Position numbers and translations under genes: made by a program
In this document: piece by piece, positions 19,522-52,476 of the stretch
Numbering within the stretch: the stretch's first letter is position 1
Layout: each line of letters starts with the position of its first letter
Notes under the pieces: generated by a model
Seen by the model: only the letters and a program-made list of their open reading frames with translations
What the model was told of the DNA's origin: nothing
The model's database searches: none
Assembly: GCA_002269645.1 (NCBI GenBank)
Contig: NIVC01002367.1
Coordinates: forward strand, 62,001-126,000
Reading direction: 5' to 3'
Source: Macrostomum lignano
Lineage: Eukaryota
Length of the DNA stretch: 64,000 nt

Positions 19522-21574
19522 TGCATAGTGACTGTATGATCAGTGGCTGTAGTTTTTGTCTGTTAAATGACTGTATATTATGTTCATGTAAAACTGTTAT
19601 AGATGAGTATAAGAAAGAACTTATGAAACATCCCTCGTAAATAGGATTTACTCAATGTACTCTCTCAGGGCTATCAGTTCATTGAGACTCCACGCGACTT
19701 TGATTTCATTCTCTACAGTCAGACGCCAGACACTTCTCAAACACATCCCTTGGACTTGAACTCACGAATAGCGTCCGAAATCGCTTAGTCTCCAGTCAGC
19801 ACCTCTGGGTACACCACGTTCCTCGTCTTAGTTCCAGAAGTACGGACACGGACATTAGCAGCGTTCCTTGCTCGCGACAGAGCCGTATACAGCTGGCCAT
19901 GAGTGAAGCAACCGACAGCGAGGTCCACGCCAACTGTGTCCAGAGACTGTCCCTGTGACTTATGGATCGTCAGGCAGAAACTCGGCTTCACAGGGAACTG
20001 TAATCGTTTAAAACTGACGGGCAGGTCCGCATTGCTAGGAATCAGCGGGATTCGCGGCAGAAGAATCTCATCTCCCGTGAACTGGCCAGCGGCAATCTTG
20101 CACCGAATCACGTTCTCGCCCATCGCGAGTATGATGAGCCGCGTACCATTGCACAACCGTGGCGGGTTGATGTTCCTCAGAAGCACTACTGGCATACCCA
20201 CTTTCAGCCTCAACAAGGGAATCGGAAAGTTCGGGGCATCCAGCTGGTTCAGCAACTCAGGCGGGAAGTGCGTAGCGGCATCCTTATCGGCCTCACTGTC
20301 TATTGAGCGGTACTCTCGCAGGCTTCCGGGGAACATGCCCAGACACGTCTCATTGATGGCATCCACTGAGTCATTGTAAGGCGCCAGGATCGCTCGGTTT
20401 GCAAAGTAGCTGTCTCTTTCCACTGGTTCTTCAAACGATGGGTACACAAAATTGATCAGGTCAGTGAGAGGCCCTTCCGCAGAAATCACGATCTCGGCTG
20501 GCAGAGACACTTTCTCCTCCACATCCTGCTCCCTTGTTCCGGATCCGATCTGTGGAGGGTTAAAATGTCGAATATTTCATAACCTATACACACTTTTAAG
20601 CATAGACATTCCTAAATGACGCAAACTTAAAAAATTGAGCTCAAAAACAAATCCGCGTCTAGTGTATCATTGTCAATCATTTAATAAACTGATGAAATCA
20701 GACTTACCTGCTTGAGTAGCTCGGTGTACATCTGATACGCTACAGAATCGGAACTGCTCAGCATCCGGATGTTTCTCATCAGGCGATGCCGTTGGAAGTA
20801 TTTCCACAGTGAGGATCGGCTCACACACGCCATGACGCTGTTAGCACGAGTCCCATGCACCACAACCGGTAGGAGCTGCCGGAAGTCACCAGCGCACACA
20901 AACACCAGTCCGCCAAATGGCGAGTCCTGCTTCCGCACTGTAGAAAAAATACTAAACTAAAGACTATTTAATTGGAGTTAAATTGAAGGAGCAGGAGGAG
21001 CAGGAAGAGCAGTAAGTGGGCGCAGGGCCCAAACCAATATATTTATAGAACATTTAAAACTTTGGGGGGTTAAGCCCAGAATAATAGAGAGGGGGTAGAG
21101 TGCGCGACTGAGGAAAGAGGCGAGAACGGAGAGCCAATCAGAACGCAGCAAGGGAGAGAGAGATAAGAATAACAAGATTGAGCTAGACAGAGAGAGAAAA
21201 CGGAGTAAACAGAGACAATTGAAGGTGAACTAAGAAATGACTAGGAAAGTCGCGACACTCCCCCCAAAAAATGGAACATTTTTTGAATTTTCGAGTACCA
21301 ATAGAATTATGAATTAGAGTTCAAGAAACAACCTTAAAGCAAATTTAACAATGCTGTACAAATACGACTAAGAATTTCAATACAAAACCTGTGGAGACTA
21401 GAGTGAATGCAAATTTGACCAAGAAATTTCACGTGTGCGATTTTAATGAATAAACTGTTACAACCAAATGAAAACTGACTACATCTACCCTCCCCCCTAA
21501 AAAATTAATTTAATTTTTCACATTGTGACTACATGGTGAAAGAAAAAATTGAATGACGAATTAACGAGGCGATC

Positions 21575-23610: not shown

Positions 23611-23611
23611 T

Positions 23612-23742
23612 CGATGAGGCCGACAGACGAAGCGATGAGGCCGACAGACGAAGCGATGAGGCCGACAGACGAAGCGATGAGGCCGACAGACGAAGCGATG
23701 AGGCCGACAGACGAAGCGATGAGGCCGACAGACGAAGCGATG
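23612..23742. repeat. 21-bp tandem repeat (GATGAGGCCGACAGACGAAGC) x6
   Basis: Direct reading. Confidence 0.95.
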
Positions 23743-26700: not shown

Positions 26701-26989
26701 GACAGAAGCACATGTGCGGGCTTGCCTATGCCTATGTCACTCGGATCTCTGTCGGTAGACCTGCCATCAGCTGCAAACAGAGCGTCCCGCAGACCGCTAT
26801 ACGTCTCGCTGCGCAGGTCCTGCTGATCGGTCCGCAAATACAGCAGACTCTCTGCCTCAATCTTGGCACACATGTCCACCAAGTACTGCTGAAATAATCT
26901 TCGGCCATAGTGTAGCACAGTGAACTGGCCCGCTCGCACCATGATTTCGCTCGCGTATTACTTCATTGGCGTCAATTTCTTGCTTCTAT

Positions 26990-29466: not shown

Positions 29467-32400
29467 ATGGCCGATAATCAAAATAATGACAATACGGCAT
29501 GTCCAGTCTGCGCCGAGTTGCTCTGTCGAACGAGCATGGTGCGACATCTAGTGAGACGCCACGCATCATTCATCCGCGAGTTCGACTGGACCGGTGTTGA
29601 AGAACAACGACGTCCAAACGCGGGTGCGCCTATAACGGCAAAGGCGTTGGCTGTGTTGAAAGCGACCAGGTTGCAGCATGGCGGTGCTGTGTACGACATG
29701 ACAATGTGTCCACACTGCCATAAGATTGTTCGTTGTGTCGAAAGACATATAAAACGATCATGCAAGCGAAAGCCTGACGCAACAAACGCACGCCCAACAG
29801 ATGTGATTGCTCAACAGACTGTTGAACAGTCGGTCGTCAGTTTATCCGCTGGTCCGTCTACAAGTGGTTTACTCGACGGTGTAGACGTTGGACCAAGCAG
29901 TGATTCCAATTTTCAAACTGCGACCAAGACAGTCAACAGTGAACGCCGCCGCGCTCAAACGGTGACCCCGGCATCGAACACCGAACGCCAATCAGCAGCT
30001 AAGTTCGCAACCGGGTCGACCAATACCGCACCTGATCATGTTAGACCGTGTGTCGTCGAGTCTGTCGAAGAGTTGTACATCACAGACGATGGCACCCAAG
30101 TTGGACCGGATCGATTCAAACAGAGACCATCTGGCGACGACCGTGTTCATCAATCGTCTAACAGTGATTCAGTCGGCAACAGCATCACCGATGCGGTGAT
30201 ACTAAAGGCGCGCCAATTTCAAGGTAATAATATTTAATCGTTAAATTCTTCTATATTAGTAGATAGTATCGCACAATATTATTGTATACTTATCGACGTG
30301 TACTAATTACATAGTAAATGGATATTGTTTTATGCTTAAACAACCAACAGGCTATTTGACTGATCTGCAAAAAACAGCTAGTCAACTTGACAGGCTTGCA
30401 GAACAGCTTCGTCCAGACATGGAGACTAGCGACGTAGACATTGTCGATGTGACACGTGTACTCCGTGGTCACGTCGAATTGGCGTCTAAACAGCTGGTCC
30501 GTGCACTCGAGACGAGCATCAGTCAGGTCAAGCGTCCTGCTATCGATAGACTGGCCAGCGCGGTACAACGGCACCAAGAAGTAGGAGAAGAGATCGCGGT
30601 TGGTAACGTCGTCGCGACATCAGACGACGAGATTGTTGCCAGCTTATTGGACGCGATCGAACAGTGTGCCAAGGACAATGAAACTGCAGATTCTGAGCAG
30701 CAAGGCAGAGTCATTGTCGTACCAGCGCCGCCTGACAACGACCAAGCCGCCGATGTGTCGTCTGGTTCCGATGCCGACATTCAGGACGAAGCGGATGACA
30801 ATGCGGGTGGTTCCGACAGCAGTGTGAGCGAGACTGATGATCCACTTGCCGTGATCGACTATGGTGAAGCACAGTCTATCGCCGAGGACATGACTAAGCG
30901 ACTTGTCGATATTTGGTGGAAAATTAATAACAAGATCGAAGAAAACAAGTCGCATGTCCATCGTCGGAAACAACTGACCACTGCGGTTCGAGGAACGCTT
31001 GCCAAATTAAAACATAAGCTGGGCGTCAGTCTGGAGACTTGGTTAAATGCTCCGCACCAAGTTGCCACAGACTTGACAGAGATGAAAACCCGCGGTGTCT
31101 GGCAAGCAAGTACCGCCGGAGTAAAAGCATGCCAATTACAGTGCATCCTAGCCGCAGTCAAGACTCTATTGGAAAATGAGTCTGATTTCGGTGCCATCAC
31201 TGTAATTAGGGCACTCCGGTTATCGGAACCACCCAACGGCGTATTCACTGACGCAGCAGATGACGTCACTACCGCGGCCAGACTATTACATGGAATAGCC
31301 AGCGGAGTAAAGAAGTTGCCCAGCAATCTATACCATCGAAAGACAGTGTCTGCGTTTCTAATACCTCGAATCGATGCTGTCTACGTAAGTACCTGTTTGC
31401 TTGTTTGTTTGTTTGTTTGATTATATTTTTGAAATTATAATCTATATTATGTGTAAATTAGAGCTATAAACTATGATTGTGCACATGATGGTGGTGATGA
31501 TGATGATGATGGTGATGATAAGAACGATAATGATGATAATGATGATACATAAAGATGAATTTTTGCTTCTCTTATAATACACACAGGCGCAACTCGGACG
31601 AGTCAGCCGACAACAGGATAATCGGTACCATCTGAATGATGATGCGCGACAACAAAAATACACCGAGTTGTTCCTGTCTGTCGAAGAGTATGACCTCGTA
31701 AGAAACAGGCTACTGGAATTGGTCGATATGATCGAGAAACATTCCTGGTCAGATTTACCAACAGAAGGTGCCTGGTCCGACATTGCGCGCTGGTCAATCA
31801 AACGAATTCTCCGCGAGGAAGATGGCGCGATTTCATAATGCCAATCAGTCGCGAGTTGGCATTCTTGGGCACTGCAATATTCCATAGCAATCGTGTATTG
31901 CCATGGATCTATCTGTGTCGGCATCACCTCGAAGACGCGTTAAAAAACAAAGGCTCCAGTATGGATACCGTCATAACGCGATTACCACCTAGCGAGGTGC
32001 CACACAAGCAAGGTTCGCGAGGCCGTGGTGCAACACTGTTGTCACCGAGACGATTGTGTAAATCGTTCATTCTATGGTGTCAAAAGTTTGTCACGCCCGC
32101 GCTCGAAGACCTAGATGTGCAAGTGCCTGATGAAATGCAATATATCTTCCCTACTTCCAACGGGACGGCTCGAGTCACTGGTGACTATTCGAGGCTCGTG
32201 GTCGATGGTTCGGTTCGAGTGATTGGTCGCAAATACCGGGCCAGCGATGGACGGCGCAATCAATTGTCTGCGTACGCGCGTTTTCATCCGGACCAGATTG
32301 AACAGGTGACGCATTTGTACGATACTTCGAAGCCTGTTGTCACCCGGTACTACGCCGCCGCAGCAATTGACGCAGCCCGACTCGAAGTTGCTACCGACTT

Positions 32401-33492
32401 GAGGGACTGTTTCGAAAAGTTCGCAGTCAACCAAACTGGTGACGAGCGGAGCAAATCGAAATGCGCAAAAGTCCAACAGTCCATCTTGGATGCGTCGACG
32501 CTTGCGACAGCAATCGATCAGCAGACCAGTGAGTCGGCGACGAAGACGACGACGACAACGGGAAGCAGACGACGACGACGAAGCGTTAGCATCGTATTGC
32601 CAGAGCAGCACGACCAAGCCGACGTTGGTACTGCACCGACTAAGACGTCTGGCAAATGTCGCCGCTCTCAGTCGCTGTCGCCGCGTCCGCCATCGTCCGG
32701 CAAATGTCGCCTCTCTAAATCGCCGTCGCCGCGTCCGCCATCGTCCAGCAAATGTCGCTCATTACCGCCGTCGCCGCGCTCGCCGTCGTCTGGTAAGAGT
32801 CGTCTGAAATCAAACTCTCACCAGTTGGCGTCGACATTGTCATCGTCGTTGAGCAGAATGTTGCGATCCAAGTCGCCACATTCGCCACCAAAAAAAAACA
32901 ACGCGGTATTATCAATTTGCCGAACGTCGATCTAGACGCCGACGATGATGACGATGCTGACGAAGACGCCGATGACGACGGGGCAACAACTGGCTGTCAA
33001 AGAAGCGATGACGCGACTCATACGCCAAATGTACAGACTAGCCATCGCCGCCGCTGTGACAACCGATCTGTACCTAAATCGGGGTCGTTGCTCTCCTCTA
33101 TACGTACACGCATTGGATCGAGCGTACCTGCCGATTTAAGTCGATTGGCTGCTGCTAACGATGATGCTGACGATCGGCGATTAGTCCAGACGCGGTCGGA
33201 GCGGCGCACTCGTTTGTCTGGTACATCGACTGACAGTGCTACGTCTTCAGTGGCTGTTGATCAGTCGATTGCTGCGACATCGAATGTGCGATCATCGAGC
33301 AGGCGACGCAGATCACTATCAACATCTAGTATGCGTGCGAACATCACCCGACGACGATCGCAGTCCGTTGATGCAATTGACTGCGTTGCGACTGGATCGC
33401 GTGGGGGTCGACCGGATCAACAGCAACCGCAACAACACAGGAGCTGTATTGTCACCCGATCAGGTCGTGTCGTTCGGCGCACAGATGCTTGA
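29467..33492 (+). CDS. Zinc-finger + tyrosine-recombinase-like protein (Crypton-type), 3 exons: 29467-30223, 30351-31384, 31587-33492 (two apparent 1-nt homopolymer deletions at ~31833 and ~32891)
   Basis: CPVC..HLVRRH and CPHC..RHIKRSC fingers. GT-AG introns 30224-30350 and 31385-31586 join ORFs in frame. YIFPTSNG, ASDGRRNQ and QVTHLYDTSKPVVTRYY resemble the C-terminal YR boxes. Low-complexity Ser/Arg/Asp tail. Confidence 0.6.
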
Positions 33493-34505: not shown

Positions 34506-35748
34506 TCAGCCGCTCTACTTACAACTGAGCAAGAGCGAAATAGTCAGGGTTTAAAACATCGAGATGGACAGGTCGGCCTCAATCTATGTCTATGGCTGCA
34601 ACAACGTATCGAGAGTGATAAATCGATAGGGAGACTTCAAATTTTTATTCTATGGCAAAAATGGGGCAGTAGAATGAGTATTCAGCCAGAAGGGAGTTTA
34701 GAGTGTGTACAAACAGCATGCTATATTATAACCCAGACAGTTTAACTTGTACTTTCTTAATCGCAGTCACAAACGAATAGAAGAAACAAATAGGCAGGTG
34801 TGATTTTGAATTGCAGCGGCCCATGGCATGGAGAGGAGAGGAAAGCATCGGGAGAGTGGCTTCCCCCAAGATAAGTTACCCTCAGACAGCAACAGGTGGC
34901 TTCCCCAGGATAAAAGTATTCACATACAGCGTTTCCCAGAAAAAAAACAGCAGCAGCATACGTTTCATTAGACAGATTAGCGGAGGTACAGTTTGCGGTT
35001 TTCCCAGACAGATTTTCCAAGAAAGAAACCAACCTGATATTCACTAGACGGATTAAGCAGGCAGGGAGCAGGCAGATCAGTAAGCATTAGGCTAACCCAA
35101 GATAAGTTACCTCCTATACGGACGGGCCCCTCTAACCATTCCCCCCCCCAATACAAATTACCCACATGCAGCAGCATACGTTTCATTAGACGAAATGAAA
35201 TAAAAAAAATTTTTCGGCGCGAAAATTTTCTAAGTCAAAATAATTTTGACACTTAGAGAAATTTCACATTTCTCGAGCTAGCGCAGCGGTCCCCCAGAAA
35301 AAAATACTAGGCTGTGACAGGTAAGTGGTTGGGTTTGGTGTTGTGAATAATGATAGTGATAGGTAGGTAGATTGGGTGGGTTAGTTAGTTAGTCAATCAG
35401 TATGCTATATGAGGGAGTACTACTAGTGTTTATTGTTTAGTCAGTCAGTCAGCCAGCCAGCCAGCCAGCCGGTTGGTTTGATTAACAGCAGTATTAGAGA
35501 CAGAGACAAACATAAACTATCTAACATAGATAGATAGATAGATTACCATAGACTAAAGTACTAACTAGTGTCGGTTAGCATCCATTTGTCCATCCCTCCA
35601 TCCAAACAAAGTGATGTAGGGGTAAGAGATATCGACATAGCGGTATCATTCATTCAGTTGCGCATAACCAACAACCATAGACAATTAATTCTCTTTTTAA
35701 CATTGATCGCGTGCGCACTGCTCTAATCTGTCTGTTACTAATAAATTA

Positions 35749-36243
35749 CCCTCTGCGTCTCTATTAATATCTATATAATATAATGCGCTAAAAACCTATT
35801 CTATTATTAGCAACTGTTACTATAATTGGTTTGTAGATCATTCTATTATTAGCAGTTGTTACTATAATTAGTACTAGGTAGCATCTATTTATGTAAATAA
35901 TGTGTATAATTAGTAACAAATCATCTATAAATAGATGCGTTTTCACCCCTAAAGATATTAGACAACTATAGTCTATGGCTATCGGTTGTATAAGATTCAA
36001 TCACTAGTAGTTGAGCTACGAAATGAATACTCTATATCTTTAGGGGTGAAATCGCATCTATTTATAGATGATTTGTTACTAATTATACACATTATTTACA
36101 TAAATAGATGCTATCTAGTACTAAATATAGTAACAGTTACTAATAATAGAACGATCTACAAACCAATTATAGTAACAGTTGCTAATAATAGAATCGGTTT
36201 TTTAGCGCATTATATTATATAGATATTAATAGAGACGCAGAGG
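35749..36243. repeat. AT-rich hairpin: ~210-bp near-perfect arms (35749-35958 / 36034-36243), 75-bp spacer
   Basis: Arms are reverse complements (coordinates sum to 71992) with a few mismatches. Confidence 0.93.
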
Positions 36244-36381
36244 GGAGGGAGGCCCCTTGCGCGCACGCTAGTACTAAATCTAGTACTAATTATAGTAACA
36301 GTTGCTAATAATAGAATGAACTACAAACAATACAATACATTTGTCCTATCTCTACCCCCCCCCCCCCCCCACCTTAACTCA

Positions 36382-36440
36382 CTAACCCTAACCCTAACCC
36401 TAACCCTAACCATAACCCTAACCCTAACCGTAACCCTAAC
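36382..36440. repeat. Interstitial (TAACCC)n telomere-like tract preceded by a poly-C run
   Basis: ctaaccctaaccctaaccctaaccctaaccataaccctaaaccctaaccgtaaccctaac. Confidence 0.9.
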
Positions 36441-37801
36441 AACAACCAAATATAATTCTGGGGGATCGCTGCGCTAGCTCGAGAAATGTGAAATTTCTCT
36501 AAGTGTCAAAATTATTTTGACTTAGAAAATTTTCGAGCCGAAAAAATTTTTTTATTTCATTTCGTCTAATGAAACGTATGCTGCTGCATGTGGGTAATTT
36601 TTCACGCAAACTGTACCTCCGCTAATCTGTCGAATGAAACGTATGCTGCTGCTGTTTTTGGATAACTTATCTGGGGAAGCGCCAGCAGGTTAGTTTATTG
36701 GAAAATTTATCCGTGGAAGCCTCTAAGTGTGCCCCCCCTCAGCACCACTCTGACAATGTGCCTGAGCGATAACAGGTTTGTTTCCTGGAAAATCTATCTA
36801 GGAAAGCATGATTTCTATCTTGGAAAAAACTGCCTGGGGAAACCGCAAACTGGGGGGGGGAATGGTTAGAGGGGCCCGTCCGTATAGGAGGTAACTTATC
36901 TTGGGTTAGCCTAATGCTTACTGATCTGCCTGCTCCCTGCCTGCTTAATCCGTCTAGTGAATATCAGGTTGGTTTCTTTCTTGGAAAATCTGTCTGGGAA
37001 AACCGCAAACTGTACCTCCGCTAATCTGTCGAATGAAACGTATGCTGCTGCTGTTTTTGGATAACTTATCTGGGGAAGCGCCAGCAGGTTAGTTTATTGG
37101 AAAATTTATCCGTGGAAGCTTCTAAGTGTGCCCCCCCCCTCAGCACCACTCTGACAATGTGCCTGAGCGATAACAGGTTTGTTTCCTGGAAAATCTATCT
37201 AGGAAAGCATGATTTCTATCTTGGAAAAAACTGCCTGGGGAAACCGCAAACTAGCTTTTGATTCAAACTATGCACTCTTGTAGGCATTAGTAAATCAGTT
37301 AAAGGCATAGACAACATTAATTGATTCAGTATACAAGTGCAGCTATACTGTTTCAGTTGACCTTCAACTTTAAACTGTACTTAGAGACGCTCTGAATTGG
37401 CAATTTTCCATTCAATCCATAGATACAAGTTTCCTATACAGGGCGCATACACTCATGGAATGCTATAATATACAATCTGGAGTGGAAATATCGTAGGTTG
37501 AACCATAGACAATTGTCTGTTAGTCAGTTGTATTCTATATTTGCACATAGTATTGCATTTAGAAGTAAAGCGAGATTCCAATCCATTATACTAGCTATAG
37601 AACTCCTTGTTACATGCGCGCTCGATTTATCAAGTGCACACTGTACAAAATAGACAGTTAATTATCAGACTATGTTAACACATAGACATTTTTATTGACT
37701 TAAAACTCTACTTAAAGCTCGATTAATCAGTCTGAGTCCTCTCTCGCATTTTTTCTCTCCGTCGCTATCTCTCACCTATATAGCAACAAATACAATTCAA
37801 C

Positions 37802-38042
37802 ATGCAACGGCAGCCTACTGACAACAACGTTACCGGTTGCGGAGATGGTGCTACGCGAACTATACCGAATCGACTAGTCACCATCGTAAACAACCTGTGG
37901 TCAACGGTGCTGTCGTTTGTATCAGATACATCGGCCACCGACAATGTACAACAAGATGCTGCTATCGAGTTGTGCAATACGGCTGCCGATTGTAATGTAG
38001 ATGCCGGTGCTGCCAATGCTGTTGCTGCTGATACTGCTGCTG

Positions 38043-38086
<44 letters not shown>

Positions 38087-41027
38087 AATGGTAATGGTTC
38101 TACTGCTGCTGCTGCTGCTGGTGGTGGTTCTACTGCTGCCGATGCTGATACTGATGATGCTGAGGCTGCTGCTGAACCGTCTACAGTGCCAAAGTCGCAT
38201 ACTCCTACGCCTGATGTGTCCGCTCATACACCGGTTGTGTGGCGTGACAGCACCATCGACGAGGACGATCATGCGAATAGAATTGTTGCCACCTTTTCTC
38301 CGGCTGCATCATTCTCGACTGGCGATCTCATTGGCGAGTTTTGTCGAGCATCGACTCCAAAACAATCGTCAGCCGCGGCGAATGACTTACTCAACGCGTC
38401 TATCTCGTCAGTCAACAGTCAGCTGTTATTCTGCAATGACGACGAGTTTATGCGCGATGTAGAACCGGCAGCCAATAATGGCAACAAAAGTGAGTAGAAA
38501 ACGATTATATTTTATCAATATATCTAAGCTTAACTAGTTCAAATGATTGATAGACACAGGTCTGTTATACATGAGCGTTTGAATTGACTGATTGATTGAT
38601 TGATTGATTGTTTGTTTGCTTGGTTTGTTGAATGAAAGGATTAAATTGTATAAATTAGCGTCTTTTTTTTTAACAAATAATTATCACAGGGCCGAGTGTT
38701 CAAGATGGCGCGTCGTTTGCTTCGCCGACGAGCAAACCAAGTTGTAAAAGGCGACGTCAACAGCTAATGCGCTCCGACTGCGAACTTGTATCAGATGCAT
38801 CTTCGTCATCACAGTTGTCGAGCGCAAAGCCGTCGCCCTATCAACGACACACTGGAAAATCGCCAGACGATACGCGGCGATCTGATGCGTCCAGTAAAAT
38901 AGACGCGCCCAATCATCGGATGACCATAGCATCAGCCCGTAGACCGAATCGGACGATATTGTCCAGCAGCAGTGCCTCTGGCGGTTCTGTTAGCTCGCAT
39001 ACGATCGATCGTATCCGGTCACACGCATTGTCACGCCATGCGTCTGCCTCGAATACGGCGACAATGAGAGACAATGCATTGGCTGCGATAAGAGCGAGAT
39101 GTGAGAAGAGGGCAATGTGTGTACAGTCGCCATCAACAACGGGTGCAGCGGCGGCGGCGGCGGCGGAGACGATTGATTCGGCAGCGACTATGACACCGGC
39201 GATGGCGGCGTCGGCGGCGGCGGCGGCGGCGGCGGCGGCGAATGACTCATCGTCAATCCGTAGTCAATCGCTGACACAGTTGTCTGTCGATGACATCGGT
39301 TTGACTGATGCAGCCGGTCTAGCCGCAAACACCACCGCGTATGCCAATAGAAACGCGCGTCCGACTGTCCCAAGGAGTGTACAACCCGGATACGCACTAG
39401 CCTCCGGGCCAATACGTTTCTATCGAAATCGGGACGTCGAGCCGCTTAACGCATTTTCGAGCGAAGACCGTTACGCACTCAACTCAACGCGGATACACCA
39501 CGTCGTGGAACTGTCCGGTGTGCTTGATGCTGACCAGCTTAAAGTGCGATTATACACGGCATTGCGCGGTCGAAGTAATGCGCTTGTTGTCGCCAATCTA
39601 ACTGGAAATTCGCCCAACATGCTGGATGACGATGAACAAATCCATAGGGCGCTTAATCGTCACCGACAATCTAGGCGTGTGGTTGAAGACGATCTGGATC
39701 ATAACTGGTGCGGAGTTACGTTGTACATGCAAACACCACGCAGCATGTCTGGCTACCAGTTATATACCATCATTCACCAGATACTGTCTACAGACCCGAA
39801 TATCCAGTATTTAGTAAGCGACAACGATTGCAGAATCCTTATCGCCGGCGTCCGAAATGTCAAGGCTGCGTTAGGCTCAGTTACAAGACACGATGGTTGC
39901 GCCGTGCTACGTAATGTAAATATGTCCGACTGTAGCATGCTCGTGTCAGCGTATCATTGGATCGAAACTCATAGCGAATTAGTAGTCACACCAGATCCAG
40001 ATGACGATTTTCTGATGCGCCACGTTTCGTGTAAGCACGAGATGATTCGTCTTTTTCAACGCGTACAGAAGATTCGTCGAATTAATCTAGAGCGTCTCAT
40101 TGGTTGCGCGTGCTGTGCTCATTTTATAAATCGGCATACTCGCGATCGTACCATCACCGACGTCTCTGATGACAACCATTCGACGACGACTGGTGTTGAC
40201 AATCGGACCAATGAACGCGAGGCTGATGCCATTAATCAGACTAATGTTGCTGCCGACGCCACCGCCGCCGTCGCTACCGACAACGCCTGCACCGCCGACA
40301 ACAATGCCGCCATTGCCGCCGCCTGCGCCGACGCTGATGTACAAATTGTCGACAGACCGCTATTTGAACGACGACGCGGATGTCCAACGATGCGAGCCGT
40401 GTGCGAAGCTCTCCGCCAACGCAAAGGTGTGGTGTACCTATGGGGGCCGCCTGGTGTTGGCAAGACTCACAGCGTAGCTGCGCACTGCGGTGACAATCGT
40501 GTTGTCAATATAGTCCCGTCACGAACTACAGCCAACACGTTTTTATTCGATCCGTTGGACATCGCTGTACATCGCGTCCTGTTCATAGACGAGGTTCGAC
40601 CAGAGCTGTTCGATTCAAAGTCTGACGCTATGGTGAGTAAATTAGTACATAATTGTTGATTGTTGATAATAAATTATGCAAATTTATGTAATTTATCAAT
40701 ATTGTTGATATTGATTTATGTTAATGTTTATTGTCCATCGTGCAGGTTCCGCTCCTACGGTTGATCAATGGAGACACCTTCAATGTCAACCAGAAGTATC
40801 AATCGATAGTGAGTCACCATTGGCGAGACAGACTACTCGTCCTGGCTGGTCACGACCCTGTGAATGCGTACAGCCCCGATGTACAAAGACGTCTTCGGCA
40901 TGGGCACACATTGCAAGGTCGACTCGTCTCGGTGCTGCACGTTGGGCATCCGCTATATGGGACGTACGACTGTGACGGGACGTGCGAGCCTGTACGAGAT
41001 CTAACAGGTGATCCCATACGCGATTGA
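37802..41027 (+). CDS. Spliced ~970-aa protein with low-complexity N-terminus and C-terminal Rep-like/SF3 helicase (CRESS/parvovirus NS1-like); exons 37802-38489, 38690-40632, 40746-41027
   Basis: GTGAGT...CAG introns 38490-38689 and 40633-40745 join three ORFs in frame (2913 nt, no stops). Walker A GPPGVGKT, Walker B VLFIDE, B'-like LINGDTFNVNQKY, motif C-like LVLAGH, Arg finger VQRRL. Confidence 0.85.
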
Positions 41028-42087
41028 TTGCGGTGCCCGACTGTTTGTTTTAAATTTCGCGGCATTAATAGCAGCAGTAGCAGCAGCAGCATCAGCATTA
41101 TATCAGCATTTATTATAGCAGCATTTCTAGCAGCAGCAGCAGCAGCAGCAGCAACATATTAACAGATTATGTATTTTATAGATTAGATGTATATATTATT
41201 TTTCCAATTAATTTAACTATCCCAGTCAATATGAGACTGATTATGAAATAGCTAGGGCAACAAAATAAGCTAGCAGATATTTTTATCTCAATCAATTCTT
41301 CTTTTAATATCTCCTTCCTTGTGTCCATTCTAATACTCGTAGTTGACAGAAAGTACATTTTCTTGTGAGAGTTTGTGTAATCTGGTTTGACACATAGACT
41401 AAATTGTATGAGAATGAAATGTGTGAACCTGCTAGTTGTCTATGGTAATCAGTCGACATTCTAATAATCTGAATATCGACATCTCAATAGCTGAACATGT
41501 CTGTTTGTAGTGGCTAGCATGGTCGGTGCATGCGGGTGAACATAAATGTTTGCATTTGTGAGTATGGTCGGTGCACACTGGTGAACAGGACTGTTTGCAT
41601 GCAGTGGCGATTTTAATCGGTGCACATGGCTGGTTGCAGTGGCGAGCATGGTCGATGCACACGACTGACTGTTAAAACTGGAAAATTATTGAGATAAACC
41701 AACTGACATCTGTATATTAATTAGTAAGTAGGGAAAAAATCACAATGTTTTATATGTTGCTTCTGCCATTTTTTAATCGTTTGTACATATATATATACAT
41801 ATATTATTTATTTATGTGATTATATTTTTGCTCGTGGCTTGTACATACTATTGTATCCATAGTTGATTGGTTGACTTTGTTTCAAAGTGGTCAATTTGTT
41901 GTTTTGTTAAATACTTGTATGTGTACAGTGCGTGCCGTTACCGTTATGCATACGTTATAAAATTTGTTTGTATAATATTTAAGTGGTTTATTGACCAATA
42001 TTCCGTTGCTGGTTGTTGGTGCCAAAACTTTGTCCAAGACATGCACACACACACAAATTCATATGGGTCAATGTTTTAGTCATGGCC

Positions 42088-43578
42088 GGTCACATCACCA
42101 TTCAATTTGGTCGCATCACCATTCAACTTGGTCACATCACCAATCAGCCTGGGTCTCATCACCAGTCAGCCTGGGTCACATCACCAGTCAGTCAGTGTCA
42201 CATCACCAGTCAGTCTGAGTCATATCACCAGTCAGTCTGGGTCACATCACCATTCAGTCTGTTTCACATCACCAGTCAGTCTGGGTCACATCACCATTCA
42301 ACTGGGTCACATCACCATTCAACTTGGTCACATCACCATTCAACTTGGTCACATCACCAGTCAACTTGGTCACATCCCAAGTCAACTCGGTCACATCCCA
42401 ATTCAACTTGGTCACATCACCATTCAACTGGGTCACATCACCGTTCAACTTGGTCACATCACCATTCAACTCGGTCACATCACCAGTCAGTCAGGTCACA
42501 TCACAAGTCAACTCGGTCACATCACCAGTCAACTCGGTCACATCACCAGTCAACTCGGTCACATCACCAGTCAACTCGGTCACATCACCAGTCAGTCAGG
42601 TCACATCACAAGTCAACTCGGTCACATCACCAGTCAACTCGGTCACATCACCAGTCAACTCGGTCACATCACCAGTCAGTCGGGTCACATCACCAGTCAG
42701 TCGGGTTACATCACCAGTCAGTCTGGTTACATCACCAGTCAGTCAGGTCACATCACCAGTCATGTCACATCACCAGTCAGGTCACATCACCAGTCAGTCA
42801 GGTCACATCACCAGTCAGTTGGGTCACATCATCAGTCATTAAGGTCACATCACCAGTCAGTCGGGTCACATCACCAGTCAACTCGGTCACATCACCAGTC
42901 AGTCGGGTCACATCACCAGTCAACTCGGTCACATCACAAGTCAACTCGGTCACATCACCAGTCAGTCGGGTCACATCACCAGTCAGTCAGGTCACATCAC
43001 CAGTCATGTCACACCACCAGTCAGGTCACATCACCATTCATTAAGGTCACATAACTAGTCAGTCGGGTCACATCACCAGTCAACTCGGTCACATCACCAG
43101 TCAGTAGGGTCACATCACCAGTCAACATGGTCACATCACCAGTCAGTCAGGTCACATCACCAGTCAACTCGGTCACATCACCAGTCAGTCGGGTCACATC
43201 ACCAGTCAACTCGGTCACTTCACAAGTCAGTCGGGTCACATCACCAGTCAGTCGGGTCACATCACCAGTCAACTCTGTCACATCACCAGTCAGTCGGGTC
43301 ACATCACCAGTCAACTCGGTCACATCACAAGTCAACTCGGTCACATCACCAGTCAGTCGGGTCACATCACCAGTCAACTCGGTCACATCACAAGTCAACT
43401 CGGTCACATCACCAGTCAGTCGGGTCACATCACCAGTCAGTCGGGTCACATCACCAGTCAGTCAGGTCACATCACAAGTCAACTCGGTCACATCACCAGT
43501 CAACTCGGTCACATCACCTGTCAGTCGGGTCACATCACCAATCAGTCGGGTCACATCACCAGTCAGTCGGGTCACATC
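42088..43578. repeat. 21-bp satellite (GGTCACATCACCAGTCAGTCG / ...CAACTC)
   Basis: Direct reading. Confidence 0.97.
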
Positions 43579-44231
43579 GATAGATCAACAAATTAGTAAT
43601 CTTAATTAACTGTCAAACTTGTCCTCATAGATGCCAACGGTGTGTGATTATAATTGTCAATGTTGCTTTGCTAGTGAATGTAATCAAAACTGCTAACATT
43701 GTGTAAGTATATATGTATGTATATATGCGTGTGTGCGTGTATGCGTCTCTTTGTCAAAGCTTTGCTCAATTGAGTCAAATCTGAGTACACTATTTATATT
43801 CGATATAACAGAAAAAAAAGAAAAAATCCAAACCAGCATACGAACAACGGATAATAACTGTCAATAAGCTGATTAAAATTTTCGTTGAAATATAATATAG
43901 TTTAAAAAAAAATTATATTTACAAATGTGAGCCATTCTTTTTTATTGTTTTACATTTTTTCCGTATTGTCAGATGTAGACTATTTTGAATCATAATAAAG
44001 TCAGTCAAATAGTCTGAGAAGGCACCGCGTCTGGACGAGGCAGCGTCTGATGAACTGGTTGACCGATTGTTGGTCGTTGACTGTGAATACACTCCATTAT
44101 GTTGGATCCACTTGCACACCAATGTGATGGTCACACGCGCTGTCGGAAATTGATTGGGTAGCGATATGCTGCTGTAAGACATTCATTTAGAATGGACTGC
44201 TAACCTAACATACACAATTGTACATGTGATG

Positions 44232-44339
<108 letters not shown>

Positions 44340-44645
44340 AATAAACAGCGATATAGAATATAGAATATAGAATATGACATGCTCAACAATGACTAACCTG
44401 ATTCCAGTCGGCTGTGTGTAATTCGTTCAACCCAGCTATAATCCATTTGGTTGTTTGTTCTATGCTCTGTCTGCTGTACACTGCGTGCGCAGCAGCATTT
44501 TATTGTTGAATCAAACGTAAAAGCGAATCTTAGATATATTGATAAAATATAATCGTTTCTACTCACTTTTGTTGCCATTATTGGCTGTCGATTCTACATC
44601 GCGCATGAACTCATCGTCATTGGCGAATAACAGGATAAGTGGTCC

Positions 44646-46015: not shown

Positions 46016-46029
46016 CTTCAAATCTTCAA

Positions 46030-46800
46030 ACAATTCGCGACCGCCAGTCCATATATGCCAGCCGGTGATCGTAGTGACAGGGCGCTGGCACGCGAATCGC
46101 GCCTACCGAACTGCGCCGTGTTGTGCGCGACTGCTCCGAATGTCAGGTGACCCGACGGTGCTGCGGTTTGGCTCCGGTCCAGCGCGTCGTCGTGTGTACT
46201 GTTGACGACGACACATCGCGACTGACCGGCTGTCCAACCCGCGGACGGTTTCGACACCTGACAATTTGCGACCGCCAGTCCGTGTATGCCAGTCTGTGGT
46301 CGTAGTGGCAGGGCGCTGGAACACGTATAGTGCCTGCTGAACGGCGCCGTGTTGTGCGCGACCGCTCCAAGTGTCAGGTGACCCGACGGTGCTGCGGTTT
46401 GGCTCCGGTCCAGCGCGTCGTCGTGTGTACTGTTGACGACGACACATCGCGACCGACCGGCTGTCCAACCCGCGGACGGTTTCGACACCTGACAATTTGC
46501 GACCGCCAGTCCGTGTATGCCAGTCTGTGGTCGTAGTGGCAGGGCGCTGGCACACGTATCGTGCCTGCTGAACGGCGCCGTGTTGTGTGCGACCGCTCCA
46601 ATTGTCAGGTGACCCGACGGTGCTGCGGTTTGGCTCCGGTCCAGCGCGTCGTCGTGTGTACTGTTGACGACGACACATCGCGACCGACCGGCTGTCCAAC
46701 CCGCGGACGGTTTCGACACCTGACAGTTGCGACCGCCAATCCGTATATGCCAGTCCGTGGTCATAGTGGCATGGCGCTGGCACACGTATCGTGCCTGCTG
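46030..46800. repeat. 231-bp GC-rich tandem repeat, ~3.3 copies
   Basis: GTCAGGTGACCCGACGG at 46142, 46373 and 46604. Confidence 0.96.
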
Positions 46801-46869
46801 ATCTAGGTAGACCAGTCTGTGATCGTACCGACACGTCGCTGTTGTCGGCCGTCTACTCATTCAAACGCA

Positions 46870-50084: not shown

Positions 50085-50320
50085 TTCAGTCTATCAGTGT
50101 TAGTGATTTCATAACATTAGATATTGATTGTTGACGTTGTTTATGCATTACATATGTAAATATGAATATCGTTTTCTGTTTTACATTAGATGGTTGGAAT
50201 GATTCGTCTCTATGAGGAAAATGAAGATTAAAAGAATGAATGAGAATGAGATTGACAATTATAATGCGACTGAGACTGCTTGAGAGTGCAACATATTGAA
50301 AGTGATTATGGGAGACTATA

Positions 50321-50900
50321 CCAGTCTGGTCACATCACCATTCAACTGGGTCACATCACCAGTCAGTCGGGTCACATCACCAGTCAACTCGGTCACATCA
50401 CCAGTCAGTCGGGTCACATCACCAGTCAACTCGGTCACATCACCAGTCAGTCGGGTCACATCACCAGTCAACTCGGTCACATCACCAGTCAGTCGGGTCA
50501 CATCACCGGTCAACTCGGTCACATCACTAATCAGTCGGGTCACATCACCAATCAACTCGGTCACATCACCAGTCAACTCGGTCACATCACAAGTCAACTC
50601 GGTCACATCACCAGTCAGTCGGGTCACATCACCAGTCAACTCGGTCACATCACCAGTCAGTCGGGTCACATCACCAGTCAACATGGTCACATCACCAGTC
50701 AGTCAGGTCACATCACCAGTCAACTCGGTCACATCACCAGTCAGTCGGGTCACATCACCAGTCAGTCGGGTCACATCACCAGTCAACTCGGTCACATCAC
50801 CAGTCAGTCGGGTCACATCACCAATTAACTCGGTCACATCACTAGTCAATGCAGTCACATCACCAGTCACCACAGTCACATCACCAGTCACCAATCATCA
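50321..50900. repeat. 21-bp satellite, same family and orientation as 42088-43578
   Basis: Direct reading. Confidence 0.96.
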
Positions 50901-52476
50901 CCAGTGGTATGGATTCTTTACAACTGTTATTATAAACAGGCATATATTTATATACTCACTTGTTCAATTGGTCAAGTTGTTGCCAATTATCCATGATTAT
51001 TAGATGTTGGATTAGTTGTAACTCTTATAATAAATAGTCGATCTGTTGGCTGTGGCTGGAATTCAAATTTAACTAAAGGTTAATTAATAATACAATCACT
51101 TCTTTTGTGTCTGTCTGTCTGTCTGACACATTTAATTCATTGAGGGTCAGAGAGATAGATAGTGAGAAGGTTGGCCAATAGAACGTTGTGGTAGCCTAGC
51201 CCGTCTATATAGTATGGAATTGGATGGGAGAGCAACGTGTTTGTACACGGACGGACGGACGGACAGACAGACAGACAGACAGACAGCGAATAACCGACCG
51301 CACATCGTTGTCTTGTGCGTACAACGGACCGTTGTGCGTTCATCGTTTGATATCAAATTGGTTTGCTAGCTAATTAGACAGGCTAAAAGATCGCGTGCGT
51401 GGAAGTTTAGTGGTTTCGATCGATCAATGAAAGTACAGTGTTGGGTGGTGGGGCCAAGCGAAGCGAGCGAGAGGATTGGGGGGGGTGGGGAGGTTGGGGC
51501 TTTTGGGGGCAGAGTGGCGAGCGATGGAAGAGGGGGTAAGCGACCGCGGAGTCGAGGTTTGGTGTGTGTTTTGAAAGTACAGGGAATTCATTGTGACTGG
51601 AAAAAAAGACGAAGTAATTTAATTAGACGTTGGATTTGAAAGTTGAAATAGACATAGAATGAAGAATAAAATGTGAAAGCGCCAATTTTAAATATTTCAA
51701 TAAACAGATGAATGAATCCAATACGCGTCAATGTACCAACCAAGTATAAATCACTTGGCGCACTATACTCATTCCAGTTCATTCACAAGTTCAATCACAG
51801 TTTATCATAATCCAAGATTCCAGAAACAATCAAACGAATCGGACAGACTGGGCGAATGCGCAAAATGATCAAAACTCACAAGCAAGAGAATATAGCTAGT
51901 TATAACTAACTTTGCTTAACCATAGATTGAATGAATGAATGAATGAATGCAGAATTGGCTTCGATTGATGCTCGCGAGCGCGCATTTTATCAGTTAGCAG
52001 GCTACCCCCACGCTTTCTATTTCGATACTAAACGAGCTAAATATAAACGGGGGATGACCCTAGACAGTATACAATTGACCTTGTCATCGGCCAATACAGA
52101 GCAGCGAAAACCAACCCCCATAATAGAAGCCAATAGAGGCGTAAAATTGATGCTAAAATTGGCGAGTATGGTATATCCTAGGGTCTTTGCTTTTTAGGAA
52201 CAAAAAAGTTATGACAATCAATTTCCTAGGCAAGTCAGTATCAGTCTCAATTAAAGTTGACAATATGGTTACGCAATCTAAATCAAGTTTGGTGCTACGC
52301 TTCCACACTGCATTTACAATACTGTGACGCAATTCAAGTTGGAGTTACAATTCAGTTATGAAGGAAATCTATCGCATAGCTACAGACAACTCATTTTTAG
52401 TATAGTTGGTTGGATTGAGCCATTTTTTCCTAAATCTATCGCATAGCTACAGAGAACTCATTTTTAGTATATAGGA

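What the first reader, a model, noticed from the sequence alone, without database searches (positions are those of the whole stretch)
37802..41027. Intact three-exon ~970-aa gene ending in a CRESS/parvovirus-like Rep-SF3 helicase with an apparently degenerate nuclease domain
Seen: the ORF track's three separate ORFs splice in frame through canonical GTGAGT...CAG introns (38490-38689, 40633-40745) with no stop or frameshift, unlike every other element in the window. SF3 motifs are present: GPPGVGKT, VLFIDE, LINGDTFNVNQKY, and LVLAGHDPVNAYSPDVQRRL, where motif C Asn appears replaced by His. Upstream, GVTLYMQTPR and VKAALGSVTRHDG sit where HUH motifs II and III (YxxK) would be but lack the His pair and catalytic Tyr. 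Inference: a viral-type Rep that gained introns and a ~450-aa disordered N-terminus, either domesticated or serving as the helicase of a non-HUH element.
Basis: partly seen in the sequence, partly recalled or inferred. Interest (0 to 1): 0.8.

Follow-up and report, generated by a model that had tools for sequence, protein, structure and literature searches.

The report
Flatworm gene from a viral Rep
This is an intact, intron-bearing gene, probably in a Macrostomum-type flatworm genome, that descends from the replication protein of a small circular ssDNA virus. It keeps the helicase-type ATPase but has lost the DNA-cutting residues, a pattern already seen in Rep genes captured by other viruses.

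Summary
Exons 37802-38489, 38690-40632 and 40746-41027 join in frame into 970 codons with no stop, through two AT-rich GTGAGT...CAG introns. Paralogue alignments run ungapped across the intron 2 junction.

- **Relatives.** The closest are Macrostomum lignano proteins (43-58% identity). More distant ones are about 300-aa CRESS-type Reps on 1.4-6.5 kb contigs, with intact HUH, Tyr and SF3 motifs.
- **Nuclease domain.** GVTLYMQT falls in the motif II column and GSVTR in the motif III column. The His pair and the catalytic Tyr/Lys are absent.
- **ATPase.** Walker A, Walker B, the B' lysine and the arginine finger are kept. The motif C Asn is Gly followed by His in all four flatworm-type members.
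- **Structure.** The AlphaFold model best matches AAV Rep68, papillomavirus E1, SV40 T antigen and CRESS/parvovirus Reps, ahead of RuvB and p97.
- **Selection.** Synonymous sites between family members are saturated (pS 0.70-0.88) while pN is 0.21-0.55, so the nuclease-dead protein has been under purifying selection.

It is most likely an endogenised and retained Rep-derived gene family. A mobile two-gene unit is the main rival, because an unknown neighbouring gene is linked to the Rep-like gene in two loci. Splicing of intron 1, expression and function remain untested.

The parts
37802..38489 (+). Exon 1 (codons 1-229 plus 1 nt). Ala/Ser/Thr/Asp-rich low-complexity N-terminus. The start ATG is 18 nt downstream of a TATATA.
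   Evidence: No homologue covers this exon, so its membership in the gene is inferred from splice sites and frame only.
38490..38689 (+). Intron 1 (200 nt, GTGAGT...polypyrimidine...CAG, GC 0.28), phase 1
   Evidence: Predicted, not verified by transcripts.
38690..40632 (+). Exon 2 (codons 230-877). It holds the rest of the low-complexity region, the nuclease-like domain, a linker and the first half of the ATPase.
39454..40143 (+). Residues 485-714: HUH-fold-like N-domain without catalytic residues, plus a helical region conserved with CRESS-type Reps.
   Evidence: AlphaFold pLDDT is about 85-96 with a beta-alpha-beta-beta-alpha-beta core. hhalign against HUH-intact cores gives E 8e-6. The best TM match is the circovirus Rep nuclease 7kij.
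39712..39735 (+). GVTLYMQT, in the motif II (HUH) column. The His-x-His pair is replaced by G-V-T.
   Evidence: Column counts: His 7/7, 6/7 and 7/7 in intact relatives.
39868..39894 (+). ALGSVTRHD, in the motif III (Y-x-x-K) column. Tyr is replaced by Ser and Lys by Arg.
   Evidence: Tyr 8/8 and Lys 8/8 in intact relatives.
40144..40368 (+). Residues 715-789: Ala/Asp/Thr/Asn-rich linker, absent from the paralogous loci.
   Evidence: pLDDT below 50. Absent in L002 and L004.
40369..41027 (+). Residues 790-970 plus the stop: SF3-type ATPase domain, interrupted by intron 2, with a Cys/His-bearing C-terminal tail.
40444..40467 (+). Walker A, GPPGVGKT
   Evidence: G, G, K and T/S conserved in all members.
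40576..40593 (+). Walker B, VLFIDE
40633..40745 (+). Intron 2 (113 nt, GTGAGT...CAG, GC 0.23), phase 0. Absent from L002 and L004.
40746..41027 (+). Exon 3 (codons 878-970 plus the stop)
40779..40802 (+). B' motif FNVNQKYQ, with an invariant Lys894
   Evidence: Lys in 19/19 sequences.
40833..40859 (+). Motif C region LLVLAGHDP. The sensor-1 Asn column holds Gly912, followed by His913.
   Evidence: Asn in 14 of 15 other members; Gly 4/4 and His 4/4 in the flatworm-type clade.
40890..40892 (+). Arg926, in the candidate arginine-finger column
   Evidence: Arg in 18/18 sequences that cover the column.
44526..44633 (-). 109-bp inverted copy of the exon 1/intron 1 boundary (38423-38531), 92.7% identical, flanked by (GA)n
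29467..33492 (+). Neighbouring unknown multi-ORF gene ('gene X'). A homologue is also linked to the Rep-like paralogue in M. lignano locus L002.
   Evidence: No family assignment.

Best explanation
**What it is.** The gene is a host-resident descendant of the Rep gene of a CRESS-type (circular Rep-encoding ssDNA) virus. It is fixed as a small, divergent gene family in Macrostomum-type flatworms.

**What has changed since capture (shown).**
- It has acquired spliceosomal introns.
- It has gained a roughly 480-aa low-complexity N-terminal extension carrying a KRRR basic cluster.
- It has gained a low-complexity interdomain linker.

**What the protein keeps and lacks (shown).**
- It keeps the two-domain Rep architecture.
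- The N-domain keeps the HUH fold but lacks the metal-binding His pair and the nucleophilic Tyr.
- The C-domain keeps Walker A, Walker B, the B' lysine and the arginine finger of SF3 helicases.
- The sensor-1 Asn is replaced by a clade-conserved Gly-His.

**How it probably works (inferred).**
- The N-domain cannot nick or join DNA. It most likely acts only as a DNA-binding or protein-binding module.
- The C-domain probably still oligomerises and binds nucleotide, with altered or slowed hydrolysis.
- The protein would then work like the nuclease-dead initiators or captured Reps. These are papillomavirus E1, polyomavirus large T, avipoxvirus apvRep and HHV-6 U94. That means an origin- or DNA-binding ATPase, or a dominant-negative partner of incoming viral Reps, rather than a rolling-circle initiator.
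For: **Gene model.**

**Host.** The nearest relatives P0001 and P0002 are annotated Macrostomum lignano proteins. P0002 sits on a 220-kb contig, about 5 kb from an EME1-like gene and about 9 kb from a COG7 gene.

**Viral ancestry.**
- An exhaustive phmmer search finds only 11 relatives.
- Profile searches add Reps with intact motifs I-III and SF3 motifs on 1.4-6.5 kb contigs.
- One of these is a 2.5-kb ambisense contig.

**SF3 assignment.**

**Dead nuclease.**

**The loss is old and tolerated.** All flatworm-type members that cover the motif columns (query, L004, L005) lack them, and so does the L002 copy at motif III. These members are only 28-67% identical in protein. Their pS is 0.70-0.88 (saturated) against pN 0.21-0.55. 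L004 has 466 open codons.

**Clade-specific gains.** Conserved Cys/His positions at C702, C705, C794, C801, H945, C953 and C957.

**Precedent.** PMC6668415 and PMC10193959.
Against: - There is no transcript evidence. Splicing, and especially exon 1 and intron 1, is a prediction.
- The low pN/pS is averaged over the whole divergence.
- Some family members look damaged. The L002 copy has one frame change in the N-domain, and a stop separates it from the same-frame ORF upstream. The L005 copy has one frame change and no detectable ATPase. Long-read indel errors cannot be excluded.
- P0001 has Tyr in place of the Walker B Glu.
- Loss of the sensor-1 Asn may mean the ATPase is also inactive.
- The Rep-like gene is linked to the same unknown neighbour gene in two diverged loci. 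A 109-bp fragment of the gene lies elsewhere in the window. Both are features expected of a repeated element.
- The species of the window was not established directly.
Confidence: 0.62

Rival explanations
1. The Rep-like gene is one of two genes of a so far undescribed mobile or episome-derived element. The other is the unknown multi-exon gene at 29467-33492. In this reading the nuclease-dead Rep serves as an E1/large-T-like initiator-helicase for the element, and the divergent copies are element subfamilies.
For: - Homologues of gene X are linked within 5-8 kb of the Rep-like gene in both the window and M. lignano locus L002. The Rep genes there are only about 46% identical, gene X about 32%, and the relative orientation differs.
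- A 109-bp fragment of the gene is duplicated 3.5 kb downstream of the gene's stop codon.
- Some family members are damaged.
- The window is otherwise packed with transposons and satellites.
Against: - No terminal repeats bracket the pair. The 2.1-kb palindrome between the two genes in the window has no counterpart in L002.
- Gene X matches no transposase, integrase, capsid or polymerase family.
- Only one full copy lies in 64 kb.
- L002 has ordinary host genes about 5 kb and 9 kb upstream of the Rep-like gene.
- Introns differ between copies, as in diverging host paralogues.
Confidence: 0.2
2. The copies are independent germline integrations of an exogenous virus lineage whose initiator had already lost the nuclease before integration, as in papilloma-, polyoma- or adoma-like viruses. 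The purifying selection seen would then mostly reflect viral, not host, evolution.
For: - HUH-less, Tyr-less relatives with an intact SF3 Asn (P0010, P0021) occur on metagenome contigs of 3.1 kb and 1.4 kb.
- All members of the flatworm-type clade share the loss.
- Foldseek also hits E1, large T and adomavirus EO1.
Against: - The L002 locus has, like the window, a long low-complexity ORF upstream of the N-domain; the L004 reading frame also extends upstream of the N-domain but has no start codon on its contig.
- They show no accompanying capsid or other viral genes.
- One has a spliceosomal intron inside the ATPase.
- L003, the P0010 contig, shows no recognisable capsid and carries tandem repeats, so it may itself be cellular DNA.
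Confidence: 0.1
3. It is a recent, selectively neutral endogenous viral fragment that simply has not yet decayed. On this view the 'introns' are chance GT...AG pairs or AT-rich insertions.
For: No expression data exist. Exon 1 is low-complexity sequence in which several frames are open.
Against: - Removing intron 2 restores an ungapped alignment to paralogues.
- There are sharp GC steps at all four boundaries.
- The 647-codon exon 2 is open.
- Family members are saturated at synonymous sites yet keep pN at 0.21-0.55 and the ATPase motifs.
- The catalytic losses are shared across the clade.
Confidence: 0.05
4. It is a cellular AAA+ ATPase unrelated to viral Reps. The motif resemblance would be limited to the P-loop.
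For: The query alone gives only Walker-A-level hits to AAA, FtsH and dynein. The highest-scoring profile hits in PDB are dynein and p97 P-loops.
Against: - Those hits cover only Walker A, or Walker A to Walker B.
- E1 is the only full-domain hit among the 60 listed rows.
- Structural ranking puts SF3 proteins first and aligns both domains to AAV Rep68 and to CRESS or parvovirus Reps.
- The N-domain is homologous to HUH cores.
Confidence: 0.03

Closest known systems
Rep proteins of CRESS-DNA viruses (Cressdnaviricota), unclassified lineage represented by P0011, P0013, P0015 and P0017-P0020
   Same: - Same domain order: HUH-fold domain, helical region with the conserved W and DPF-like motifs, then the SF3 ATPase.
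- Alignable over both domains.
- Walker A, Walker B, the B' Lys and the Arg finger are shared.
   Different: - The query lacks the HUH His pair, the catalytic Tyr/Lys and the motif C Asn.
- It is three times longer, through an N-terminal extension and a linker.
- It has introns and lies in a eukaryotic chromosome.
- It carries extra conserved Cys/His positions.
Avipoxvirus apvRep genes and HHV-6 U94 (Rep genes captured by large DNA viruses; PMC10193959)
   Same: A captured Rep with inactivated HUH and (mostly) missing Tyr, helicase motifs partly conserved, and evidence of purifying selection. Function is unknown; regulatory or dominant-negative roles have been proposed. U94 is among the Foldseek hits.
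   Different: Those genes sit in viral genomes and have no introns. Here the recipient is an animal genome, and the gene has expanded into divergent paralogues with a long disordered extension.
Papillomavirus E1 and polyomavirus large T antigen (SF3 helicase plus inactivated HUH-derived origin-binding domain; PMC6668415)
   Same: - Same logic: a nuclease-dead HUH-fold DNA-binding domain followed by an SF3 ATPase.
- E1 is the only full-domain PDB sequence hit among the 60 listed rows.
- E1 and large T are among the top structural hits.
- The E1 DNA-binding domain 1f08 appears among the N-domain matches.
   Different: - There is no evidence of a cognate origin, of viral partner genes or of an episome.
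- Sequence relationship is closer to CRESS-type Reps.
- The sensor-1 Asn is lost here but kept in the query's SF3 relatives examined here, where 14 of 15 other members have it. I recall E1 and large T keeping it too, but that was not checked.
Co-opted endogenous parvovirus or circovirus Rep genes of animals (for example guinea-pig enRep-Myo9, bioRxiv 10.1101/572735; circovirus EVEs, PMC6069186)
   Same: Rep-derived open reading frames retained in animal germlines, sometimes fused to host sequence.
   Different: - Different viral source lineage and a different host phylum.
- Both domains are retained with a specific pattern of catalytic loss.
- It is a multi-member divergent family.
- I read only the abstracts and titles of these two papers.

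Membership tests
SF3 helicase (AAA+ clade of viral initiators) | Walker A GxxxxGK[ST] | tested here: met
   GPPGVGKT at residues 815-822. G, G, K and T/S are conserved in every aligned member.
SF3 helicase (AAA+ clade of viral initiators) | Walker B: hydrophobic strand ending in acidic residues, about 40 aa after Walker A | tested here: met
   VLFIDE at residues 859-864. D-E in 3 of 4 flatworm-type members; P0001 has D-Y.
SF3 helicase (AAA+ clade of viral initiators) | B' motif with a DNA-contacting basic residue between Walker B and motif C | tested here: met
   FNVNQKYQ. Lys894 is present in 19/19 sequences. Its role in DNA contact is inferred, not tested.
SF3 helicase (AAA+ clade of viral initiators) | Motif C ending in Asn (sensor 1) | tested here: not met
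   The column holds Gly912 followed by His913. Gly is 4/4 and His 4/4 in the flatworm-type clade, against Asn in 14 of 15 other members.
SF3 helicase (AAA+ clade of viral initiators) | Arginine finger after motif C | tested here: met
   Arg926 is in a column with Arg in 18/18 sequences. Assigning this column as the finger is by position only.
SF3 helicase (AAA+ clade of viral initiators) | Fold closer to SF3 proteins than to cellular AAA+ | tested here: met
   Foldseek against PDB ranks AAV2 Rep68, papillomavirus E1, SV40 large T and B19 NS1 (E 5e-8 to 6e-5) ahead of RuvB and p97. BFVD top hits are Reps, NS1 and E1. The PDB profile search finds only E1 across the whole domain among the 60 listed rows.
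SF3 helicase (AAA+ clade of viral initiators) | ATP-driven 3'-5' unwinding as a hexamer | not testable with these tools
   No biochemical data.
HUH endonuclease superfamily (Rep class) | Motif II, His-hydrophobic-His metal site | tested here: not met
   G-V-T in the columns where intact relatives have His 7/7, 6/7 and 7/7.
HUH endonuclease superfamily (Rep class) | Motif III, catalytic Tyr (YxxK) | tested here: not met
   Ser626 and Arg629 where intact relatives have Tyr 8/8 and Lys 8/8.
HUH endonuclease superfamily (Rep class) | Motif I (FTxN-like first strand) | tested here: inconclusive
   RIHHVVEL aligns with the FxITh strand of relatives, but the columns are gappy.
HUH endonuclease superfamily (Rep class) | Beta-alpha-beta-beta-alpha-beta fold homologous to Rep nuclease domains | tested here: inconclusive
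   - The model has the expected topology at pLDDT about 90.
- hhalign of the cores gives 83.5% probability and E 8e-6.
- Foldseek with the domain alone has no hit below E 1e-3.
- The best TM match is circovirus Rep 7kij (TMt 0.68), among generic ferredoxin-like folds.
Parvoviridae NS1/Rep | Significant match to the Parvo_NS1 family or closest relatives being parvoviral | tested here: not met
   The query has no Parvo_NS1 hit. Only some distant relatives hit it, at E 2e-6 to 1e-2 and on the helicase part. The nearest intact relatives are small CRESS-like Reps.
Cellular AAA+ (FtsH, p97, dynein) | Homology beyond the P-loop, second-region-of-homology or lid domain | tested here: not met
   Matches are limited to Walker A, or Walker A to Walker B.
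Co-opted endogenous viral element | Intact reading frame maintained under purifying selection | tested here: met
   970 open codons. pN is 0.21-0.55 against saturated pS of 0.70-0.88 between family members. Caveat: the branches are not partitioned into host and pre-integration time.
Co-opted endogenous viral element | Orthologous copies at syntenic sites in related species | not tested
   No other Macrostomum assemblies were available through the tools.
Co-opted endogenous viral element | Expression and correct splicing | not testable with these tools
   There is no transcript resource.

The most novel reading that the evidence does not exclude
The nuclease-dead Rep-SF3 gene and the linked unknown gene X together mark a previously undescribed kind of eukaryotic mobile or episome-derived element in flatworms. 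Its initiator would work like papillomavirus E1 or polyomavirus large T rather than by HUH nicking. That would be an independent, chromosomally recorded instance of the ssDNA-Rep to dsDNA-initiator transition.
Probability: 0.12. Interest if true: 0.8.

Novelty: new member of a known kind. Interest (0 to 1): 0.45.

Why it matters
Captured Rep genes that lose the nuclease but keep the SF3 ATPase have arisen repeatedly. Examples are papillomavirus E1, polyomavirus large T, avipoxvirus apvRep and HHV-6 U94.

This gene family would add an animal-genome example:
- It has spliceosomal introns.
- It has a large disordered extension.
- It has a clade-fixed change of the sensor-1 residue.
- It has new Cys/His clusters.

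It offers a natural case of what a Rep scaffold is kept for once rolling-circle chemistry is gone. It also gives a host link (flatworms) for an otherwise host-less lineage of CRESS-like Reps known only from short metagenome contigs. No paper in the held library connects Macrostomum with such viruses.

Tried and rejected
- **Word-index protein search with residues 463-970.** It found nothing. The likely cause, not tested, is that low-complexity words filled the candidate list. The exhaustive search then found relatives.
- **Exact-product look-ups.** The 630-aa exon 2 ORF and P0001 are not on record. The joined 970-aa product was not accepted.
- **Collection scans.** Scans of metagenome and viral contig collections with clade profiles gave no confirmed loci.
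- **P0004.** This 1115-aa tandem-repeat protein has E 8e-15 summed over 19 repeats. I treated it as a repeat-inflated match and left it out of all alignments. P0008 (adenylate-kinase repeats) matches the P-loop only.
- **Gene X as a tyrosine recombinase.** This was suggested by eye from its sequence. It found no support in Pfam, PHROGs, or PDB single-sequence and two-sequence profile searches, so I dropped it.
- **The 2.1-kb palindrome as a conserved cis element or origin.** It lies between gene X and the Rep-like gene. There is no counterpart in L002, where the only inverted repeat nearby brackets a Tc1-like remnant.
- **Conservation of the N-terminal 480 aa.** None was detectable against the L002 upstream ORF or other window ORFs.
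- **The two introns as copies of one inserted element.** Their similarity is no better than shuffles.
- **dN/dS as a ratio.** dS is saturated in every available pair, so only pN and pS are reported.
Full report
**1. Observation**

The three plus-strand ORFs at 37802-38497, 38767-40659 and 40731-41027 join through 38490-38689 and 40633-40745 into a 2913-nt coding sequence. That is 970 codons plus a stop, with no internal stop.
- Both introns begin GTGAGT and end CAG after a pyrimidine-rich stretch.
- Their GC is 0.28 and 0.23 against 0.52-0.54 for the exons. A 150-nt composition profile shows steps at all four boundaries and at both gene ends.
- Read-through of either intron meets a stop within ten codons.

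Intron 2 has independent support. Every homologue's tblastn match stops near 40644-40656 and resumes near 40734-40752. The spliced peptide aligns to P0001 and P0002 across the junction without a gap.

Intron 1 and exon 1 rest only on splice signals, frame and composition. Exon 1 is trinucleotide-repeat-rich, and several of its frames are open.

**2. What the protein is related to**

Alone, the protein gives only P-loop-level matches in Pfam and in PDB sequences, and nothing in the word-indexed search. An exhaustive phmmer search of 1.84 billion representatives with residues 463-970 found 11 proteins.

The two best are annotated Macrostomum lignano proteins.
- P0001 is 58% identical. It is a gene model fused to a GPCR.
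- P0002 is 43% identical. It is PAA62424.1 on the 220-kb contig NIVC01001938.1, about 5 kb from an EME1-like gene and about 9 kb from a COG7 gene.

I therefore take the window to be from a Macrostomum-type flatworm. This is an inference, not a direct identification.

Other members come from metagenomes: P0003, P0005 and P0007 from JGI, and P0006 from ENA. Weaker hits are 300-350-aa proteins on contigs of 1.4-6.5 kb. They came from that search and from two profile searches. They are P0011, P0013, P0015 and P0017-P0020.
- They have a first-strand FxITh motif, an HHH or HLH motif, a KYITK motif and a complete SF3 set.
- Pfam assigns their C-halves to DUF5906, Parvo_NS1, PPV_E1_C and RNA_helicase. 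Two N-halves match Gemini_AL1 weakly.
- One sits on a 2.5-kb ambisense contig whose opposite-strand ORF runs off both ends, as in a circular CRESS genome.

**3. The two domains**

In multiple alignments, GVTLYMQT falls in the motif II columns and ALGSVTRHD in the motif III columns.

| Column | HUH-intact relatives | Query | L004 |
|---|---|---|---|
| Motif II, first His | His 7/7 | Gly | Thr |
| Motif II, middle | His 6/7 | Val | Val |
| Motif II, last His | His 7/7 | Thr | Ala |
| Motif III Tyr | Tyr 8/8 | Ser | Arg |
| Motif III Lys | Lys 8/8 | Arg | Gln |

A profile-profile comparison was restricted to the nuclease cores, upstream of the strongly conserved W/DPF region. It compared four HUH-less sequences with seven HUH-intact ones. 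It gave 83.5% probability and E 8e-6, with motifs II and III in register.

In the ATPase:
- Walker A (G, G, K, T/S) is kept in all members.
- Walker B D-E is kept, except that P0001 has D-Y.
- The B' lysine is present in 19/19 sequences.
- An Arg after motif C is present in 18/18 sequences.
- The motif C Asn is present in 14 of 15 other members. It is Gly in all four flatworm-type members, and each Gly is followed by His.

**4. Structure**

AlphaFold2 on residues 485-970 with a 19-sequence alignment gave mean pLDDT 74.5. Both domains scored about 85-96, and the 715-789 linker scored below 50.
- Foldseek against PDB ranked AAV2 Rep68 first, aligned over both domains. Papillomavirus E1, SV40 large T and B19 NS1 followed, and only then RuvB and p97.
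- Against BFVD the top hits were CRESS Reps, parvovirus NS1, E1, adomavirus EO1 and HHV-6 U94.
- A PDB profile search found many P-loop matches. Papillomavirus E1 was the only one of the 60 listed rows spanning the whole domain (E 1.4e-4).

The N-domain modelled alone has the beta-alpha-beta-beta-alpha-beta core. Foldseek gives no hit below E 1e-3 for it. The best TM match is a circovirus Rep nuclease domain (7kij, TMt 0.68). The E1 DNA-binding domain and PCV2 Rep' also appear, among generic ferredoxin-like folds. The fold evidence for that domain is therefore supportive but not decisive by itself.

**5. History of the family**

The paralogous M. lignano locus L002 and the metagenome contig L004 carry the same two domains.
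- In L004 the two domains lie in one frame. In L002 the helical part of the N-domain continues in frame into the ATPase. Neither locus has intron 2 or the 75-aa linker.
- L004 has 466 open codons with no start codon, which suggests an upstream exon.
- The L002 copy has one frame change within the N-domain. A stop also separates it from the same-frame ORF further upstream, which might be an intron.
- The L005 copy has one frame change and no detectable ATPase.
- Both assemblies could carry indel errors, so I do not call these copies dead.

Every family member that covers the columns lacks the catalytic residues. The loss therefore predates their divergence.

That divergence is deep. Protein identity is 28-67%. 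Synonymous differences are saturated (pS 0.70-0.88), while non-synonymous differences are 0.21-0.55. This includes the degenerate N-domain itself: L004 against L005 gives pN 0.21 and pS 0.88. The nuclease-dead protein has therefore been under purifying selection for most of that time.

The clade has also gained conserved Cys/His positions that are gaps in the intact relatives. They are C702 and C705, C794 and C801, and H945, C953 and C957.

The N-terminal roughly 480 residues are 79% small or polar residues and contain a KRRR cluster. They show no detectable similarity to the equally low-complexity upstream ORF of L002.

**6. Surroundings**

The window is dominated by repeats and mobile elements:
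- LTR-retroelement ORFs at 295-10987.
- Helitron-like pieces at 19785-26942.
- An OTU ORF at 59544-60200 and a Pif1-like ORF at 60882-61433.
- Several satellites.

Upstream of the gene lies a 2.1-kb near-perfect palindrome at 34943-37058, with a tandem copy reaching 37252. Nothing comparable exists in L002.

A 109-bp inverted copy of the exon 1/intron 1 boundary, 92.7% identical, lies at 44526-44633 between (GA)n runs.

The most interesting neighbour is the unknown multi-ORF gene at 29467-33492.
- A collinear homologue lies 5-7 kb from the Rep-like gene in L002, in the opposite relative orientation. For one ORF the match has E 1e-18 at 32% identity.
- It matches no known family.
- A tyrosine-recombinase look that I noticed by eye found no support, and I do not claim it.

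**7. Mechanism**

Shown:
- The ancestry, the architecture, the pattern of retained and lost residues, and purifying selection.

Inferred:
- Without the metal site and the Tyr, the N-domain cannot perform HUH nicking and joining. By analogy with the HUH-derived origin-binding domains of E1 and large T (PMC6668415), it probably binds DNA or partner proteins.
- The ATPase retains what is needed to bind nucleotide and to form inter-subunit contacts. Loss of the sensor-1 Asn suggests changed or reduced hydrolysis, with the conserved neighbouring His as a possible substitute.
- Possible roles follow those proposed for avipoxvirus apvRep and HHV-6 U94 (PMC10193959). One is a regulatory DNA-binding ATPase. 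Another is dominant-negative interference with Reps of infecting relatives.

I give 0.62 to the retained host-gene reading. The other weights are 0.20 for a two-gene mobile unit and 0.10 for repeated integration of an already nuclease-dead virus. Neutral decay-in-waiting and a cellular AAA+ origin get 0.05 and 0.03.

**8. Novelty**

The kind is known: a captured or endogenised Rep with a dead nuclease and a kept helicase. This is a new member in a new host phylum, with some unusual features. These are the introns, the long disordered extension, the Gly-His at sensor 1, the Cys/His clusters and the divergent paralogues.

The held literature has no paper linking Macrostomum with CRESS viruses or circoviruses. 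That library is incomplete, so this is not proof of absence.

Noticed in passing
window 34943-37252: A 2.1-kb near-perfect palindrome. Arms 34943-35150 and 36851-37058 are 100% complementary. Nested arms lie at 35155-35299 and 36456-36600, with a central hairpin at 35790-36202. A tandem copy of 36605-36851 sits at 37004-37252. The structure ends about 550 bp upstream of the gene's ATG. It is either a foldback-type element or an assembly artefact.
   Followed up: partly
window 44526-44633 (-): A 109-bp inverted copy of the exon 1/intron 1 boundary of the Rep-like gene, 92.7% identical, embedded between long (GA)n/(CT)n microsatellites. Because it includes intron sequence, it was copied at the DNA level.
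   Followed up: partly
window 29467-33492 (+) and L002 15364-17654 (-): An unknown multi-ORF gene with an N-terminal CPVC...H...H zinc-finger-like segment is linked to the Rep-like gene in both the window and the M. lignano paralogous locus, in different orientation. It matches no Pfam, PHROGs or PDB family.
   Followed up: partly
L003 (P0010) and P0021, ENA metagenome contigs: Rep-like proteins of about 330 aa that also lack the HUH His pair and the Tyr but keep the SF3 motif C Asn. They sit on short contigs (3.1 and 1.4 kb) without a recognisable capsid gene. Either this is a second nuclease-dead branch, or the loss is older than the flatworm clade.
   Followed up: partly
Residues C702, C705, C794, C801, H945, C953 and C957 of the model (window about 40105-40116, 40381-40404, 40947-40985): Cys/His positions conserved in the flatworm-type clade and gapped in HUH-intact relatives. 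They may be metal-binding modules gained after capture.
   Followed up: no
L004 and L005 (JGI metagenome 3300040801): Two contigs from one environmental sample carry diverged members of the same nuclease-dead clade (54-67% identical to each other). This implies that a related animal, or its DNA, was present in that sample.
   Followed up: no
window 19785-26942 (-), 59544-60200 (+) and 60882-61433 (+): On the minus strand, Helitron_like_N and Pif1-type helicase ORF pieces are split over several adjacent ORFs. On the plus strand lie an OTU protease ORF (59544-60200) and a Pif1-like helicase ORF (60882-61433). These are SF1-helicase, HUH-type elements unrelated to the Rep-like gene.
   Followed up: partly
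window 42013-43609 and 50280-51003; 21518-23596; 46018-46860: Satellite arrays. The 42-43.6 kb and 50.3-50.9 kb arrays share the same unit (83-89% identity). A GC-rich array lies at 21.5-23.6 kb, open in several frames. A 231-bp tandem repeat lies at 46.0-46.8 kb.
   Followed up: no
window 295-10987: Retroelement ORFs (integrase, RT/RNase H, protease-like and gag-like) from at least two LTR-type elements, split into many adjacent ORFs.
   Followed up: no
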